A stretch of 63,747 nt of DNA, the filler included, from Octopus bimaculoides (Eukaryota), in NCBI RefSeq assembly GCF_001194135.2. It is 6 parts of 6 records of this genome, joined end to end, with 100 filler letters (N's around TTAATTAATTAA, not from the genome) between each part and the next. Parts side by side here need not be neighbours in the genome. Positions count along the whole stretch, not along the records: positions 16,856 to 46,308 come from NC_068984.1; 5 more parts are not named here. The stretch is one strand, 5' to 3'. Shown here in pieces: positions 20,625-44,462 of the stretch. A model generated the notes under the pieces. That model was not told where the DNA came from, made no database searches, and saw only the letters and a program-made list of their open reading frames with translations. Numbering within the stretch: position 1 is the first letter of the stretch; each line of letters starts with the position of its first letter. The translations under genes and the position numbers were made by a program.

Positions 20625-21360
20625 TTTTTTTTCTTTCCTCAAATTTTCTTCCATTTCTCACCGAGTGTTTTCCGTACACCTAGGGCAGAGAAGCTCATTG
20701 TATGCATTCACAGTTTACACACGCAAATTCACAGGTAAAATATGTATGTAAAAAGAAAACTAACAAATAGATAAATTCATGAATGGATGTTGTTTTCACA
20801 ATGATAATGCTCTTCTCAGTACATGAGTTGTTCCAGTTAACACGATTTTCTGCATTTCTTGCAGGGATGGTAGGCCTGGTATCATTTTCAAATAGGTTTC
20901 AGTACCTTTTTTATCATTCCTAGAGAACCTACGATCACTGGTACGGTAGTCGCCTTGAGGTGCCACATTTTTTCAATTTCTATTAGCAAGTCTTTATATT
21001 TACTGATCTTGTCAAATTCTTTCGACGCTATATTGTGATAGCAAGGAATACTCATGTCAATTAATAAACACACCTTTTTTGTCTGATCTTTTATAATAAT
21101 ATCCGGTTTATTAGCTTTTATAGTTTTGTCGGTATGTACGGGGAAGTCCCAGAGAATCGACACATTTTGTACCTCAGTCACAGCTTCAGGATGATGTTTA
21201 CACAATTTGTCAGCAGTTAAGATTTTATAATGTTGACATATTGTCCAGTGTAAATACTGGCCGACTCTGTCATGTCTTGCTTTATATTCTACAGGTGCTA
21301 AGACTTTACACCCTNNNNNNNNNNTATTCTACAGGTGCTAAGACTTTACACCCTAAGATT
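20625..21360 (-). mobile_element. R4/Dong-like element 3' part (second lineage)
   Basis: YLHWTICQHY...ILWDFPVHTDKTIKANKPDIIIKD...LIDMSIP...KEFDKISKYKDL...VPVIVGSLG, followed by a 3' UTR. Confidence 0.9.
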
Positions 21361-29800: not shown

Positions 29801-30594
29801 ACGCGGTTTTCATTTGACTATTTGGGTATCTAAAAAAAATAATAGTGTGAATTTCACCATGATTTAAAAGTTTTTGTGAACATGCTTATGAAGCATTTCT
29901 ATTGACTATACACATTTAAACGACGTCCTTAGCATTTATGGAACAATCTACTAAGTTCTAGACCATAGCAGATAAGCGTTACGCTAAATTCTTTTCATAT
30001 GATAATGATAGTTACCACACCCAAATAAGCCGTTCTCAAAGCAATAGGTGACATGAAAGTAATGTGATTAAGTTCTGCTGTAGGAGGATAGATAGGTAGA
30101 TAGACAGACAGAGAGACAGACAGAGAGACAGACAGAGAGACAGACAGAGAGACAGACAGAGAGACAGACAGACCACACACACTACATCCAACCCATACTC
30201 ACACACACACACACGCACGCACATGGACACACACACAGACGGACGAACAACAGACGGAAAATGGACAGAAAGTCGTTACTCCCTGAGCTTACCAGTTTGA
30301 GTGAACTAAGACTTTGGATCAAATATAGACCAAAGCAGGGTGTTTGGCAAGCGGATTCTCGTGAGGCACTCAAGCTTCTCTGTCACACGGGCAACACCAA
30401 CGGTGGGGGTTCCACGTCATCTTTTTACAGAGGATTGGTAGCGGCTTAGTGTGAAGACGTCCTGAAGGTCAACTAGCTGGCCTGTTCTGGAGGCCATTCG
30501 GGCCAGGACTCTTGGATAACGTATTTTTCACTCACTGGTAATGTCCTGTACTTCATGTATATTTTTAATTATACACACATAGATATATATATAT

Positions 30595-30861
30595 ATAACC
30601 AATGGGCTTCTTTCACTTTACGTCGACTGAATCTACTCGCAAGTCTCTGGTCGGCCAGAGGCTATAGTAAAAGACACTTGCCCAAGGTATTATACAGTGG
30701 GACTGAACCCGGAACTATGTGGTGGGAAGCAAGCTTTTACCACGCATCAACGCCTGTGCCCATATTCCTTTATTTCTTTACTTCGGCCACGCTAGAGCAC
30801 TTCCTTAGGGGTTCCTGGTCGAAGAAATAGACCCCAGGAGTTATTCTGTATAAGCCTGGTA

Positions 30862-30927: not shown

Positions 30928-31694
30928 TANNNNNNNNNNNNNNNNNNNNNNNNNNNNNNNNNNNNNNNNNNNNNNNNNNNNNNNNNNNNNNNNNNNNNNN
31001 NNNNNNNNNNNNNNNNNNNNNNNNNNNNNNNNNNNNNNNNNNNNNNNNNNNNNNNNNNNNNNNNNNNNNNNNNNNNNNNNNNNNNNNNNNNNNNNNNNNN
31101 NNNNNNNNNNNNNNNNNNNNNNNNNNNNNNNNNNNNNNNNNNNNNNNNNNNNNNNNNNNNNNNNNNNNNNNNNNNNNNNNNNNNNNNNNNNNNNNNNNNN
31201 NNNNNNNNNNNNNNNNNNNNNNNNNNNNNNNNNNNNNNNNNNNNNNNNNNNNNNNNNNNNNNNNNNNNNNNNNNNNNNNNNNNNNNNNNNNNNNNNNNNN
31301 NNNNNNNNNNNNNNNNNNNNNNNNNNNNNNNNNNNNNNNNNNNNNNNNNNNNNNNNNNNNNNNNNNNNNNNNNNNNNNNNNNNNNNNNNNNNNNNNNNNN
31401 NNNNNNNNNNNNNNNNNNNNNNNNNNNNNNNNNNNNNNNNNNNNNNNNNNNNNNNNNNNNNNNNNNNNNNNNNNNNNNNNNNNNNNNNNNNNNNNNNNNN
31501 NNNNNNNNNNNNNNNNNNNNNNNNNNNNNNNNNNNNNNNNNNNNNNNNNNNNNNNNNNNNNNNNNNNNNNNNNNNNNNNNNNNNNNNNNNNNNNNNNNNN
31601 NNNNNNNNNNNNNNNNNNNNNNNNNNNNNNNNNNNNNNNNNNNNNNNNNNNNNNNNNNNNNNNNNNNNNNNNNNNNNNNNNNNNNNGTTTTTTT

Positions 31695-32463: not shown

Positions 32464-32845
32464 GGAGGCGCAATGGCCCAGTGGTTAGGACAGCGGACTC
32501 GGGGTCATAGGATCGCGGTTTCGATTCCCAGACCGGGCGTTGTGAGTGTTTATTGAGCGAAAACACCTAAAGCTCCACGACGCTCCGGCAGGGGATGGTG
32601 GCGAACCCTGCTGTACTCTTTCACCACAACTTTCTCTCACTCTTACTTCCCGTTTCTGTTGTGCCTGTAATTCAAAGAGTTCAGCCTTGTCACACTGTGT
32701 CATGCTGAATATCCCCGAGAACTACGTTAAGGGTACACGTGTCTGTGGAGTGCTCAGCCACTTGCACGTTAACTTCACGAGCGGGCTGCTCCGCTGATCG
32801 GATCAACTGGAACCCTCGACGTCGTAAGCGACGGAGTGCTAACAA
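32464..32845 (+). mobile_element. Full-length tRNA-derived SINE family B
   Basis: A-box TGGCCCAGTGG and B-box-like GGTTTCGATTCCC. Nearly identical to 52300-52600 and embedded in (TATG)n. Confidence 0.92.
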
Positions 32846-34790: not shown

Positions 34791-35581
34791 ACAAAAAGCA
34801 TTTGTCCATGCTGCGGGCGGGACGGGGTTATCTCCTCTTACATCGGCTCTGGCTTTGATGATATTCGGAGGAACTGTGCCAAAACTATTCAATAAATGAG
34901 AAATTCCAAGTCTGCAATAGGAAACTTTTTTTAATGTGGGTATTGTCTGAATACTTCTTTCCTGGAGTTTAAAAATGTCTCTGGGTCAAGCGAGTTTTTT
35001 TAGGGTTCTTGCCCTCTCAGCCAAGCAAATTTTACATCGTTTGCTCCCGTTTATATAAGTCCCTGGTTGATCAAAGAGTTTTCATTTAATTTTGTATGGA
35101 GTTCCTTCCTATTTTAAGTGTCATACACGGCTGGCCAGGGACGTCATGTTGCACATTTCCGGTGACTCTAGCCATCTACGTATGGTGCTTAAAAGAGAAA
35201 GGAACCCCATACATAATTAAATGTTTCAGTCAAGAGACTGCAGTCATTACGGCCGATCTTAACAATCAGTTTCACACCGGATATCAGGGTAACAGGGTGG
35301 TTATATAATACATATGCCCTTTGTGAATGGTAGTTATAGCAAAAATATAACAACTGTAACAGCTTCCACTCCCGAAGAGCACTGTATTAGCTAACCATCT
35401 AGTTAGCTAACAGCCATTGGAAAACCAGCTATAATGTATCTATAATACTGCATACTTTGATATCTACAAATGTGACTAGGGTGGTAAAAGCACCTACAAT
35501 GCTAAAATAGGAGCTAAAATGCTCTAATGCTGTAGTTAACGCACATTAATGAAAACATGTACACTAACAGGGACCTGAATC

Positions 35582-35682
35582 GACCGAAAAATGCCGATTG
35601 AGATTTCTTAATACTGACATCAATTTGCGCAATTTCCGTGGCCTCATCAGTTAAGCCCGCTAGATCTCAGCCATTTTCGGAC
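35582..35682 (-). ncRNA. H1 hammerhead copy 1 (G12C, damaged stem II)
   Basis: CUUAA-CUGAUGA-GGCCA cggaaa UUGCG-CAAA-UUG augu CAG-UA-UUAAG. Confidence 0.8.
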
Positions 35683-35936
35683 TTACTTCTCTATTAGTAT
35701 ATATGTCTTCGTCAACCAAATTAATGGATGATTTAGCGATTCGCCAATGTGTATACACAAAATTAATATAAAGAGCAGTTTGCAATGTTTAACCAAAAAA
35801 AGAGAATTATAATTGTCATTAAATGTGACTAGAGTGTTAAGAAACACCTACATTGCTAGAAATAAGAGCTAAAATGCTCTAATTCTGTAGTTAACGTACA
35901 TGAATGAAAACATATACAGTAACAGAGACCTGGATT

Positions 35937-36037
35937 GTCCGAAAAATGCCGATCGAGAATTCTTAATACTGATGTCAGTTTCGGCAATTTCCGTTGCCTC
36001 ATCAATTACGCCCACTGGATTTCGGCCTTTTTCGGAC
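35937..36037 (-). ncRNA. H1 hammerhead copy 2 (C3U, one stem I mismatch)
   Basis: CGUAA-UUGAUGA-GGCAA cggaaa UUGCC-GAAA-CUG acau CAG-UA-UUAAG. Confidence 0.85.
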
Positions 36038-36189
36038 TTATTTCTCTATTAGTATATATAACTACCTAATCAATTTTAGTGACAATTATAATTCTCATTT
36101 TTGGTGAAACATTGCAGCCTGGTGTTTATATTAATTCTATATATATACATTTGCGAATTGCTGGATCATCCATCAATTTGGATGAGGAA

Positions 36190-36290
36190 GTCCGAAAAGG
36201 GCCGAGATCGAGTGGGCTTAACTGACGAGGCAACGGAAATTGCCGAGACTGTCGTCAGTATTAAGAATTCTCGATCGGCATTTTTCGGAC
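36190..36290 (+). ncRNA. H1 hammerhead copy 3 (A14G)
   Basis: GUCCGAAAA..GCC..GAUCGAG..CUUAA-CUGACGA-GGCAA cggaaa UUGCC-GAGA-CUG ucgu CAG-UA-UUAAG..CUCGAUC-GGC..UUUUCGGAC. All helices pair. Confidence 0.88.
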
Positions 36291-36413
36291 GATTCATGTC
36301 CTTTTTAGTGTATATGTTTTCATTCATGCGCGTTAAGTACAGCATTAAAGCATGTTAGCTCTAATTTCTAGCAATGTAGATATTTCTTAACACCCTAGTT
36401 ACAGTTACGTATG

Positions 36414-36491
<78 letters not shown>

Positions 36492-36527
36492 CATATACAC
36501 ATGCATACACACACATATGTATATAGA

Positions 36528-36710
36528 CGCAGGAGTGGCTGTGTAGTAAAAAGCTTGCTTCCCAACCAGGGTCTCACTGGATGGTACCTTGGGCAAGTGT
36601 CTTCTACCATAGCCATGGGCTGAATAAGGCCTTGTGACTGGATTTTGTAGACGGAAGCTGAAAGCAGCCTCTGGTGTGCGCGTGTGTTTTTGTGTGTGTA
36701 TGTGTGTCTG

Positions 36711-42170: not shown

Positions 42171-42784
42171 TCGTCAGACATANNNNNNNNNNNNNNNNNN
42201 NNNNNNNNNNNNNNNNNNNNNNNNNNNNNNNNNNNNNNNNNNNNNNNNNNNNNNNNNNNNNNNNNNNNNNNNNNNNNNNNNNNNNNNNNNNNNNNNNNNN
42301 NNNNNNNNNNNNNNNNNNNNNNNNNNNNNNNNNNNNNNNNNNNNNNNNNNNNNNNNNNNNNNNNNNNNNNNNNNNNNNNNNNNNNNNNNNNNNNNNNNNN
42401 NNNNNNNNNNNNNNNNNNNNNNNNNNNNNNNNNNNNNNNNNNNNNNNNNNNNNNNNNNNNNNNNNNNNNNNNNNNNNNNNNNNNNNNNNNNNNNNNNNNN
42501 NNNNNNNNNNNNNNNNNNNNNNNNNNNNNNNNNNNNNNNNNNNNNNNNNNNNNNNNNNNNNNNNNNNNNNNNNNNNNNNNNNNNNNNNNNNNNNNNNNNN
42601 NNNNNNNNNNNNNNNNNNNNNNNNNNNNNNNNNNNNNNNNNNNNNNNNNNNNNNNNNNNNNNNNNNNNNNNNNNNNNNNNNNNNNNNNNNNNNNNNNNNN
42701 NNNNNNNNNNNNNNNNNNNNNNNNNNNNNNNNNNNNNNNNNNNNNNNNNNNNNNNNNNNNNNNNNNNNNNNNNNNNNNNNNNNN

Positions 42785-42822
<38 letters not shown>

Positions 42823-42939
42823 CGTAATAAAAACAGCTGTTTGCAACGTTGTACTGTAAAAGAAAATTATAGTCGTCAACTTAACTTGAGTAAGGGTGTG
42901 AATAGTTATTCACACCCTTTGTCAAGTTTAGTTCACGAC

Positions 42940-43130
42940 TATATGTACATATATATATGGGAGAATTTACGAAAAGAAACAACAACAGACGAGGACAGGT
43001 GGTGTAAACAACAAAAGGATGTATTAGTTTAACGCTCGGGAATAGAGAAAGTCTTTAACGTTTCGAGCTACGCTCTTCAACAGAAAGAATAAGAAGAACA
43101 AAGAGAAAAACACGGAGAAAAAAAATTTGA
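42940..43130 (-). repeat. H3 repeat with minimal hammerhead-like motif (43052-43088, A6U)
   Basis: UCUUU-CUGUUGA-A-GAGC gua GCUC-GAAA-CG-UU-AAAGA. Confidence 0.7.
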
Positions 43131-43149
43131 ATATATATATATGTATGTA

Positions 43150-43345
43150 TTTATGTGTGTGTTTGTCTCTGTGTCTGTGTTTGTACCCCCACCACCATCG
43201 CTTACACGGTGGTATGTTTACAATCCTGTAACTTAGTGATTCGGCAAGGCAGACCGATAGAATAAGTACTGGGGTTGATTTCTTCGACTAAAAACCTTTA
43301 AGGCGGCGTTCCATCATTGCTGCAGTCAAATAACAGAAACAAGAA
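43150..43345 (+). mobile_element. SINE family D 3' half
   Basis: TGTTTGTACCCCCACCACCATCGC...CCGATAGAATAAGTAC...AAGGCGGCGTTCCATCATTGCTGCAGTCAAAT. Confidence 0.75.
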
Positions 43346-44100: not shown

Positions 44101-44462
44101 NNNNNNNNNNNNNNNNNNNNNNNNNNNNNNNNNNNNNNNNNNNNNNNNNTATATATATATATATATCTGTATGTATATACATAGGCATGCAAATGTGTGT
44201 GTGTATAAATTATCGTTTGCTGAAACTTGTATTTGTGTTTTAGTTCATATATATTTGTGGAAGACGATGAGAGACGTGACGTATAACGCTCCGGGACGAC
44301 TTGATAGTGATTGGTCTCGTCCCAAGTGGAAATAAGAAAAAAGTGAATAATCAGAATATTTGGAGAAGATTTGTTGCCCGTTGTACTGACAACACTGGAC
44401 GATCTAANNNNNNNNNNNNNNNNNNNNNNNNNNNNNNNNNNNNNNNNNNNNNNNNNNNNNNN

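What the first reader, a model, noticed from the sequence alone, without database searches (positions are those of the whole stretch)
35465..36403. Candidate cephalopod retrozyme: 355-nt tandem unit with a canonical type I hammerhead
Seen: three ~101-nt copies whose consensus is GUCCGAAAA-GCC-GAUCGAG-uggg-CUUAA-CUGAUGA-GGCAA cggaaa UUGCC-GAAA-CUG acgu CAG-UA|UUAAG-aauu-CUCGAUC-GGC-UUUUCGGAC. Helix I has 5+7+3+9 bp, with an internal loop placed to contact loop II. Helix III is within the palindrome ACUGACGUCAGU, and the site is GUA. Each copy has a different core lesion (G12C, C3U, A14G), so the ancestor was intact. The two minus-strand sites (35967, 35612) are 355 nt apart, so a tandem transcript would release a monomer able to circularise. 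Established: non-LTR retrozymes (short tandem units with type I HHRs that yield circRNAs) are reported in axolotl, coral and mussel. I do not know of a described cephalopod family, but novelty needs a literature/Rfam check.
Basis: partly seen in the sequence, partly recalled or inferred. Interest (0 to 1): 0.9.

Follow-up and report, generated by a model that had tools for sequence, protein, structure and literature searches.

The report
Decayed hammerhead-ribozyme retroelement in octopus-like DNA
A 940-base block holds about 2.7 mutated copies of a 355-base non-coding repeat whose reconstructed ancestor carries a complete self-cleaving hammerhead ribozyme: a dead insertion of the known "retrozyme" kind, in a group of animals (cephalopods) for which no such family has been described in the papers I could search.

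Summary
Three homologous 101-nt hairpins lie at 35582-35682(-), 35937-36037(-) and 36190-36290(+). Their majority consensus is a complete type I hammerhead. Each copy has its own core lesion: C11.1G+G12C, C3U and A14G. The two minus-strand cleavage sites are exactly 355 nt apart.

A chance origin is unlikely. No shuffle of the piece (0 of 150) gave a site with at most one core mismatch. A model built only from four published retrozyme hammerheads ranks copies C and B first and second in the 29-kb piece.

Rfam reports no hammerhead match to the mutated copies, even at lax thresholds.

The block is not a simple tandem array. A 5'-truncated unit plus a full unit lie on the minus strand. They meet, head to head, an inverted full unit on the plus strand. 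Both outer ends fall at the same unit position, and one end abuts a (CA)n/(TA)n microsatellite. This is the insertion pattern described for Penelope-like elements, the proposed mobilisers of animal retrozymes.

The three copies have diverged neutrally (83-86% identical), so this locus is a fossil. I could not reach any other copy, any expression data or any cleavage test.

Verdict: a new, decayed member of a known kind, of modest interest.

The parts
35468..35822 (-). U1: full 355-nt repeat unit (sense = minus strand). Its 3' end (...CACCCUAGUCACAUUU) is the left edge of the block.
   Evidence: Direct repeat of period 355 (D3/D4); blastn self-hits; alignment A1.
35823..36058 (-). U2: 5'-truncated unit (unit positions ~119-355), directly upstream of U1 in the sense orientation. 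Together they form a partial tandem.
   Evidence: blastn: unit 119-355 matches 36059-35821 at 86.6%; alignment A1.
36059..36077 (+). Last 19 nt of a preceding unit (UAACUACCUAAUCAAUUUU) at the 5' end of the inverted arm. The head-to-head junction with U2 lies at 36058|36059.
   Evidence: Inverted repeat I5; alignment A1 columns 1-28; sequence.
36078..36406 (+). U3: inverted full unit with a ~25-nt internal deletion upstream of the ribozyme. Its 3' end (...CACCCUAGUUACAGUU) is the right edge of the block.
   Evidence: Inverted repeats I1-I3; blastn at 77.9% over 357 columns; alignment A1.
35582..35682 (-). Hammerhead copy A. Lesions: C11.1G+G12C and a helix II A>C change. A17 is at 35612. It no longer folds as a stable hairpin (z = -0.62).
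   Evidence: own-family model R1 scores 104.7 bits.
35937..36037 (-). Hammerhead copy B. Lesions: C3U and a helix I U>G change. A17 is at 35967.
   Evidence: The independent model R2 scores 14.5 bits, E~0.04, rank 2 in the piece.
36190..36290 (+). Hammerhead copy C. Lesion: A14G (U7C is at the free position). A17 is at 36260. This is the best-preserved copy.
   Evidence: Descriptor hit with 1 core mismatch. Model R2 scores 18.4 bits, E~0.003, rank 1. Fold z = -6.4.
36407..36513 (.). (CA)n/(TA)n/(CATA)n microsatellite directly abutting the right end of the block. It is context and a possible target site, not part of the element.
   Evidence: Sequence; Tandem Repeats Finder rows 36414-36513.

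Best explanation
The block 35468-36406 is one old, neutrally decayed insertion of a short (355-nt), non-coding, AT-rich retroelement. Its source copy carried an intact type I hammerhead ribozyme. That makes it a member of the animal 'non-LTR retrozyme' kind.

Inferred life cycle of the active element:
1. Multimeric transcripts are made from tandem units.
2. Each hammerhead cuts after GUA. It may act as a monomer, helped by the internal loop in its long helix I. It may instead act as a 'double hammerhead', in which the 12-nt palindrome ACUGACGUCAGU of two units forms one extended helix III.
3. This releases a 355-nt monomer with a 5'-OH and a 2',3'-cyclic phosphate end.
4. A host RNA ligase or the ribozyme itself closes the monomer into a circle.
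5. The reverse transcriptase and endonuclease of a Penelope-like element copy the multimeric or circular RNA into a new site.

Shown here:
- The ribozyme consensus.
- The 355-nt period.
- An insertion architecture typical of Penelope-type integration: a partial tandem, plus an inverted copy joined at the 5' ends, with identical 3' termini at both outer edges and a microsatellite at one edge.
- Neutral decay that has inactivated all three ribozymes.

Inferred, not shown: transcription, cleavage, circularisation, the identity of the mobilising element, and the existence of other copies.
For: 1. The consensus has C3-U4-G5-A6-U7-G8-A9, the G10.1-C11.1 pair, G12-A13-A14, the A15.1-U16.1 pair and H17 = A. 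It has three helices with helix I open. In the hammerhead structure 92% of cells are paired, against 27-49% when the partners are slid.

2. Chance is excluded at the scale of this piece. No shuffle (0 of 150) gave a site with at most 1 core mismatch, against one such site in the real sequence.

3. Model R2 was built only from four experimentally validated retrozyme hammerheads: coral, mussel and two axolotl (supplement of PMC7229834). It ranks copy C first (18.4 bits, E~0.003) and copy B second (14.5 bits, E~0.04) over 59 kb of both strands.

4. All four published ribozymes have a palindromic helix III: ACAGUACUGU, ACGCGCGU, ACACGUGU and ACAUGU. One of them cuts after GUA, as here. Two copies of the core are predicted to join through a 12-bp helix III (-32.9 kcal/mol).

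5. The unit is 355 nt, 35.5% GC and has no coding capacity. This is inside the published definition: short tandem repeats with a monomer of about 300 bp (150-450 bp) and below 45% GC (PMC7229834).

6. The architecture matches the description of Penelope-like insertions in PMC8557442. [quoted passage not shown] The matching features here come.

7. The decay is star-like and neutral. There are 17, 12 and 19 private changes over 227 shared columns, and the ribozyme is no better conserved than its flank.

8. The 355-nt monomer folds well below shuffled controls (z = -4.09).
Against: - Rfam finds no hammerhead match to any copy, even at E<=10 on 121-nt slices. The consensus itself could not be submitted.
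- There is no covariation; with three recent copies the data cannot show any.
- The nearest-neighbour lowest-energy fold of the consensus pairs CUGAUG with CGUCAG into one long hairpin (-43.5 against -38.2 kcal/mol for the hammerhead fold).
- Only one insertion is seen. No second full copy is in the 29-kb piece, in about 60 kb of possibly related DNA that was modelled or BLASTed, or in the metagenome, prokaryote and viral collections.
- No Penelope-like reverse transcriptase is seen in the window.
- There is no clear target-site duplication, and the microsatellite is on one side only.
- R2 E-values are rough. Copy A scores at noise level (8.8 bits).
Confidence: 0.7

Rival explanations
1. This is a small patch of hammerhead-bearing satellite DNA. 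It was amplified and rearranged at the DNA level by unequal crossing-over and then a local inversion or palindromic duplication. It is not a retrotransposition product. On this reading the ribozyme is still real and ancestral.
For: The units are tandem with a 355-nt period. There is no target-site duplication and no poly(A) or other tail. The classical newt, cricket and schistosome hammerheads were first described as satellite DNA (PMC6155905).
Against: There are only about 2.7 units. Both outer edges fall at exactly the same unit position, while the inner ends are truncated at different positions. A random inversion in a satellite does not predict this pattern; target-primed reverse transcription does. 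The pattern matches the published Penelope-like insertion structure.
Confidence: 0.14
2. The block is a remnant of the terminal repeat (pseudo-LTR) of an autonomous Penelope-like element whose coding body has been lost. It is not a stand-alone non-autonomous retrozyme.
For: Penelope-like elements carry hammerheads in their pseudo-LTRs and form tandem and inverted structures. A 2026 preprint finds retrozymes to be sister to pseudo-LTRs.
Against: U2 and U1 abut directly, and U3 is preceded by the 3' end of another unit. The repeating entity is therefore the 355-nt unit itself, with no room for a 3-4 kb body. There is no protein-like open reading frame near the block. Hammerheads of Penelope-like elements are described as minimal variants lacking helix III and loop contacts; this one has a 4-bp helix III with a loop, and a 5-bp helix II.
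Confidence: 0.08
3. The block is a foldback or terminal-inverted-repeat DNA transposon (MITE-like). Its 101-nt hairpin resembles a hammerhead by coincidence.
For: The 220-nt arms are 87% complementary (I1). Each 101-nt segment is itself a strong hairpin (z about -6). The lowest-energy fold is a plain extended hairpin. Rfam gives no hammerhead match.
Against: All 13 fixed core positions, three helices and a cleavable triplet are in register in the consensus. The shuffles give none. An independent hammerhead model picks these copies first. The arms are unequal multiples of one unit. There is no target-site duplication and no transposase.
Confidence: 0.04

Closest known systems
Metazoan non-LTR retrozymes (Cervera & de la Pena 2020, PMC7229834; coral Amil224, mussel Mg353, axolotl Ax330/Ax353)
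   Same: - A short AT-rich non-coding tandem unit: 355 nt here, against 224-353 nt in the published elements.
- One type I hammerhead per unit.
- A palindromic helix III.
- A helix II of 4-5 bp capped by an A-rich 5-6-nt loop.
- GUA cleavage, as in Ax353.
- A monomer predicted to be strongly self-paired.
   Different: - There is no sequence similarity outside the ribozyme core.
- Helix I is unusually long and self-contained: about 25 bp in four segments, closing a 101-nt hairpin.
- All copies seen are dead.
- Copy number, expression and circularity are unknown.
- The published elements are described as head-to-tail arrays. This locus includes an inverted copy.
Penelope-like elements and their non-autonomous derivatives (PMC8557442; preprint 10.64898/2026.07.22.740005)
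   Same: The insertion architecture matches: a partial tandem, plus an inverted 5'-truncated copy joined at the 5' end, with high 5' truncation and a microsatellite at the insertion edge. The ribozyme lies in the repeated part.
   Different: There is no reverse transcriptase or GIY-YIG reading frame. The hammerhead here is full-size, not the minimal helix-III-less form reported for Penelope-like elements. No sequence comparison with any octopus Penelope-like element was possible.
Newt satellite 2, Schistosoma Sm-alpha and cave-cricket pDo500 hammerheads (established knowledge; reviewed in PMC6155905)
   Same: All are type I hammerheads in repeats of a few hundred bp. They have a weak or palindromic helix III that allows cleavage as a dimer of tandem units. 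An internally looped extension of helix I is needed for activity as a monomer.
   Different: The sequences are unrelated. Sm-alpha is SINE-like; no polymerase III boxes were recognised here by eye. The tertiary loop contacts could not be assessed.
Rfam Hammerhead_1 hits in the giant squid genome (235 loci, PMC6962438)
   Same: They show that type I hammerhead motifs exist in a cephalopod genome.
   Different: That paper gives only a count from automatic annotation. It gives no family, unit, tandem structure or link to retroelements. The copies here fall below the Rfam thresholds.

Membership tests
Hammerhead ribozyme, type I | Conserved core in register: C3 U4 G5 A6 N7 G8 A9, the G10.1-C11.1 pair, G12 A13 A14, the A15.1-U16.1 pair, and H17 not G | tested here: met
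   Met by the majority consensus of the three copies. At each lesion the other two copies carry the canonical base.
Hammerhead ribozyme, type I | At least one genomic copy with an intact core | tested here: not met
   Copy A has C11.1G+G12C, copy B has C3U and copy C has A14G. No other copy could be found.
Hammerhead ribozyme, type I | Three helices around the core, with helix I open-ended and helices II and III capped by loops | tested here: met
   Helix I has 5 bp plus about 20 bp of extension, helix II has 5 bp and helix III has 4 bp. In this structure 92% of cells are paired, against 27-49% when slid. No covariation is available.
Hammerhead ribozyme, type I | Recognition by the curated Rfam hammerhead models | tested here: not met
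   There is no hit at gathering or at E<=10. Only the mutated copies could be scored, not the consensus.
Hammerhead ribozyme, type I | Recognition by an independent model of validated animal retrozyme hammerheads | tested here: met
   With model R2, copies C and B rank 1 and 2 in the piece, at E~0.003 and ~0.04. Copy A is at noise level. The E-values are rough.
Hammerhead ribozyme, type I | Loop II to helix I internal-loop tertiary contact, and self-cleavage after H17 | not testable with these tools
   An internal loop (UGGG/AAUU) lies 5 bp from the core and loop II is CGGAAA. The specific contacts and the activity need experiment.
Non-LTR retrozyme (metazoan) | Short tandem repeat unit (about 150-450 bp) with one type I hammerhead per unit | tested here: met
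   The period is 355 nt, with 1.67 units direct plus 1.05 units inverted. Each full or partial unit carries one ribozyme copy.
Non-LTR retrozyme (metazoan) | Low GC (below 45%) and no coding capacity | tested here: met
   GC is 35.5%. The longest open frame is 85 aa. Two frames searched as pseudo-proteins found no relatives.
Non-LTR retrozyme (metazoan) | A multi-copy family dispersed in the genome | tested here: inconclusive
   One further 82-nt fragment related to the unit junction lies at 42822-42945. There is no full copy in the piece or in the sampled O. sinensis locus. No cephalopod genome collection was available.
Non-LTR retrozyme (metazoan) | Expression as linear and circular monomer RNA | not testable with these tools
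Autonomous Penelope-like element | A reverse transcriptase plus GIY-YIG endonuclease reading frame between the terminal repeats | tested here: not met
   The units abut directly and there is no protein-like ORF.
Penelope-type insertion (autonomous or mobilised in trans) | A partial tandem, plus an inverted 5'-truncated copy at the 5' end, with a common 3' terminus | tested here: met
   Both outer edges end at ...CUAGU(C/U)ACA(U/G)UU. The inner ends are truncated at unit position ~119 on one arm, and 19 nt before a unit start on the other.
TIR / foldback DNA transposon | A target-site duplication flanking the inverted termini, and a transposase-related partner | tested here: not met
   The flanks ...GATATCTAC and ACGTATGCATAC... 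share only 'AC'. There is no transposase ORF.

The most novel reading that the evidence does not exclude
Octopus genomes may carry a still-active, undescribed retrozyme family with two unusual features. Its hammerhead is locked inside a self-contained hairpin of about 25 bp. A built-in competing pairing (CUGAUG with CGUCAG) would act as a switch between a cleavage-competent state, probably dimeric, and a stable rod. Intact tandem copies would give abundant ~355-nt circular RNAs in cephalopod tissues. The family would be mobilised by Penelope-like elements as partial-tandem/inverted insertions. That would give direct genomic evidence for the retrozyme-Penelope link in an invertebrate.
Probability: 0.25. 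Interest if true: 0.55.

Novelty: new member of a known kind. Interest (0 to 1): 0.33.

Why it matters
If intact relatives exist, cephalopods would join cnidarians, bivalves and amphibians as hosts of ribozyme-made circular RNAs.

This locus also adds a structural clue to how animal retrozymes move. Its partial-tandem-plus-inverted layout, with identical 3' termini, is the signature of Penelope-type integration. That link has so far been argued mainly from co-occurrence and sequence trees in vertebrates.

As it stands, the locus is a dead copy of a known kind of element. Its practical value is as a seed for a genome-wide and transcriptome-wide search.

Tried and rejected
- **Rfam.** I ran cmscan at gathering on the whole piece, and at E<=10 on 1.2 kb and on two 121-nt slices. 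It gave no hammerhead match, only spurious miRNA and snoRNA hits caused by the inverted arms and microsatellites.
- **Exact-pattern scans.** Two conserved stretches were scanned in the metagenome, prokaryote-genome and viral collections. The results were 0 hits, or 37 chance hits lacking the CUGAUGA context. These collections hold no cephalopod genome.
- **Pseudo-protein route.** I translated the two longest open frames across the unit and searched 5.8 billion predicted proteins, hoping for spurious gene calls on other copies. Nothing was found.
- **Sampling related genomes.** I fetched contigs through a neighbouring transposon ORF, 8 look-ups and about 165 kb in all. Only the O. sinensis locus L039 shares many repeats with the window, and none of the loci holds the family.
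- **Own-family model R1.** Run with filters off on the piece and on three of these loci, it found only the three known copies plus generic microsatellite hairpins.
- **Covariation analysis.** It is uninformative with three near-identical copies.
- **Ideas considered and dropped.** An miRNA-like hairpin: the Rfam scores are far below gathering. A SINE with polymerase III boxes: no convincing A or B box by eye.
Full report
**Observation**

Three homologous 101-nt segments lie at 35582-35682 (minus), 35937-36037 (minus) and 36190-36290 (plus). They align without gaps at 93% mean column identity.

Read in the sense orientation, their majority consensus has these parts:
- a long helix I;
- CUGAUGA;
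- helix II, GGCAA/UUGCC, capped by CGGAAA;
- GAAA;
- helix III, CUG/CAG, around ACGU;
- U-A, then the 3' strand of helix I.

Every conserved hammerhead position is in register: C3-A9, the G10.1-C11.1 pair, G12-A14, the A15.1-U16.1 pair, and H17 = A.

Each copy departs from this at a different place:
- Copy A has C11.1G and G12C, plus a helix II mismatch.
- Copy B has C3U, plus a helix I mismatch.
- Copy C has A14G. Its U7C change falls at the unconstrained position 7.

The residue before the cut is 35612 and 35967 on the minus strand, exactly 355 nt apart. It is 36260 on the plus strand. The repeat finder independently reports a 222-nt direct repeat with spacing 355.

**Is it more than chance?**

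I wrote a type I hammerhead descriptor with 13 fixed positions plus three helices and scanned both strands of 16856-46308.
- The real sequence gives one site with one core mismatch (copy C) and one with two (copy A).
- 150 block shuffles give none with at most one mismatch and a single site with two.

Rfam is negative. There is no hammerhead at gathering on the whole piece. There is none at E<=10 on a 1.2-kb slice or on 121-nt slices around copies C and B. Only the mutated copies could be scored, not the consensus.

To get an independent test I took the four experimentally validated retrozyme hammerheads printed in the supplement of Cervera & de la Pena 2020: coral Amil224, mussel Mg353, and axolotl Ax353 and Ax330. 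I aligned them and built covariance model R2, which contains nothing from this window. With filters off on the 29-kb piece:
- copy C is the top hit (18.4 bits, E~0.003);
- copy B is second (14.5 bits, E~0.04);
- copy A is at noise level.

These E-values are rough, but the ranking is clear.

The same four published ribozymes all have a palindromic helix III (ACAGUACUGU, ACGCGCGU, ACACGUGU, ACAUGU). Ax353 cuts after GUA. Both features are shared with ACUGACGUCAGU|GUA here.

**Folding**

The consensus, copy C and copy B fold far better than shuffled controls (z = -5.8, -6.4 and -3.7). Copy A has lost this (z = -0.6).

The predicted lowest-energy structure is not the hammerhead. CUGAUG pairs with CGUCAG and turns the whole 101 nt into one extended hairpin at -43.5 kcal/mol. 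The hammerhead fold is at -38.2 kcal/mol. Nearest-neighbour energies ignore the tertiary contacts that stabilise active hammerheads. Competing rod-like folds are known for viroid hammerheads (established knowledge). This is therefore a caution rather than a refutation.

Two core segments are predicted to dimerise through a 12-bp helix III (-32.9 kcal/mol). That is the 'double hammerhead' solution described for newt and viroid ribozymes (PMC6155905).

With three near-identical copies there is no covariation to count. 92% of cells are paired in the hammerhead structure, against 27-49% when the partners are slid.

**Anatomy of the block**

The repeat is larger than the hairpin, and the block is not a plain tandem array. 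In the sense orientation:
- The left arm runs on the minus strand from 36058 to 35468. It is a 5'-truncated unit (U2, unit positions ~119-355) followed directly by a full 355-nt unit (U1).
- The right arm runs on the plus strand from 36059 to 36406. It is the last 19 nt of a preceding unit followed by a full unit (U3), which has a ~25-nt internal deletion.
- The two arms meet 5' end to 5' end at 36058|36059.
- Both outer edges are the same unit position: ...CACCCUAGUCACAUUU on the left and ...CACCCUAGUUACAGUU on the right.
- The right edge abuts a (CA)n/(TA)n microsatellite.
- The flanks share no duplication beyond 'AC'.

This matches the description of Penelope-like element insertions in PMC8557442. 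That paper reports high 5' truncation and a full copy preceded by a partially truncated one. [quoted passage not shown]

Because the units abut directly, the mobile entity is the 355-nt unit itself, not the terminal repeat of a 3-4 kb element. The unit is 35.5% GC and has no coding capacity. The longest open frame is 85 aa, and neither tested frame has any relative among 5.8 billion predicted proteins.

**Age and state**

Over 227 shared columns the three copies are 83-86% identical, in a star-like pattern with 17, 12 and 19 private changes. The ribozyme is no better conserved than the flank.

This fits one insertion event from an intact template followed by neutral decay. The central CpG of the helix III palindrome has gone to UG in copy A and to CA in copy B, as expected for CpG decay. 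All three ribozymes are predicted to be inactive, so this locus is a fossil.

**Organism**

A transposon ORF fragment at 20888-21205 has as its only named relative an Octopus sinensis protein, at 66% identity. The window shares 19 interspersed-repeat matches (about 70-90% identity) with an O. sinensis contig. It shares only the transposon ORF, or at most two further short repeat matches, with the other animal-like contigs I fetched. An octopus-like cephalopod origin is therefore well supported. The species is not established.

**Related sequences elsewhere**

None could be reached. There are no exact-pattern matches with the right context in the metagenome, prokaryote or viral collections. The family is absent from about 165 kb of fetched eukaryotic loci. 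A family-specific model finds nothing beyond the three copies.

Inside the window there is one further fragment. At 42822-42945 an 82-nt stretch is ~78% identical to the unit's 3'-end/5'-start junction. It is folded into a 37-nt-arm palindrome beside (AT)n and an assembly gap. This hints that the family, or a relative, has inserted more than once.

**Mechanism**

By analogy with the characterised retrozymes (PMC7229834), the active element would work as follows:
1. Tandem units are transcribed.
2. Each hammerhead cuts after GUA.
3. The 355-nt monomer is circularised.
4. A Penelope-like reverse transcriptase copies the multimeric or circular RNA into new sites.

The steps shown here are the ribozyme consensus, the period and the insertion signature. 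Transcription, cleavage, circles and the mobiliser are inferred.

**Comparison and novelty**

The element meets the testable defining features of a metazoan non-LTR retrozyme: a type I hammerhead per unit, a 150-450-bp tandem unit, low GC and no coding. It fails only 'intact copy present' and the Rfam threshold. Copy number is inconclusive and expression is untestable here.

It is not an autonomous Penelope-like element. It lacks the target-site duplication expected of a terminal-inverted-repeat transposon.

In the searchable literature no cephalopod retrozyme is described. The nearest statement is a count of 235 Rfam Hammerhead_1 hits in the giant squid genome (PMC6962438). The 2020 paper also says in general terms that such repeats occur 'from molluscs to arthropods'.

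I therefore rate it as a new, decayed member of a known kind, of modest interest. Two points could repay follow-up: the unusually long self-closing helix I with a competing pairing, and the clear Penelope-type architecture.

Noticed in passing
window 42822-42945: An 82-nt stretch is ~78% identical to the retrozyme unit's 3'-end/5'-start junction (unit 332-355 plus 1-59). It is folded into a near-perfect palindrome with 37-nt arms (42868-42904 / 42907-42943). It lies directly beside (AT)n at 42785-42821 and a 602-nt assembly gap. It may be a second, fragmentary insertion of the same or a sister family.
   Followed up: partly
window 43052-43088 (minus strand): A minimal hammerhead-like motif of the type reported for Penelope-like elements: UCUUU-CUGUUGA-a-GAGC-GUA-GCUC-GAAA-CG-U-U|AAAGA. 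It has an A6U change, one bulged A and a 2-nt palindromic 'helix III'. A descriptor written after seeing it gives 1 real hit against 0 in 200 shuffles. The independent model R2 does not report it. It lies about 110 nt from the fragment above.
   Followed up: partly
window 20795-21313 (minus strand; ORF 20888-21205): A fragment of a transposon-type ORF with 60 relatives among predicted proteins. The only named one is Octopus sinensis LOC115230721. Relatives lie next to reverse transcriptase (RVT_1) genes in other assemblies.
   Followed up: partly
window 36514-36669, 30558-30765, 32658-32837, 43131-43276 and others: Interspersed (SINE-like) repeats shared at about 70-88% identity with an O. sinensis contig (L039). 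One of them lies just right of the microsatellite that flanks the retrozyme block.
   Followed up: no
window 35083-35223: An inverted repeat with 56-nt arms (79% complementary, 29-nt spacer) lies about 240 nt upstream of the block. It may be a small MITE-like hairpin unrelated to the retrozyme unit (I4).
   Followed up: no
window 21315-21324, 30930-31686, 42183-42784, 44101-44149, 44408-44462: Runs of N (assembly gaps) and very dense di- and tetranucleotide microsatellites occur throughout the piece. The draft-quality assembly means that repeat arrays could be collapsed or truncated.
   Followed up: no
window 35988-36238 and 36003-36224: Weak Rfam matches to plant miRNA precursor families (MIR4208, MIR7723, MIR869) lie far below gathering. 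They are artefacts of the 220-nt inverted arms of the block, not miRNA genes.
   Followed up: yes
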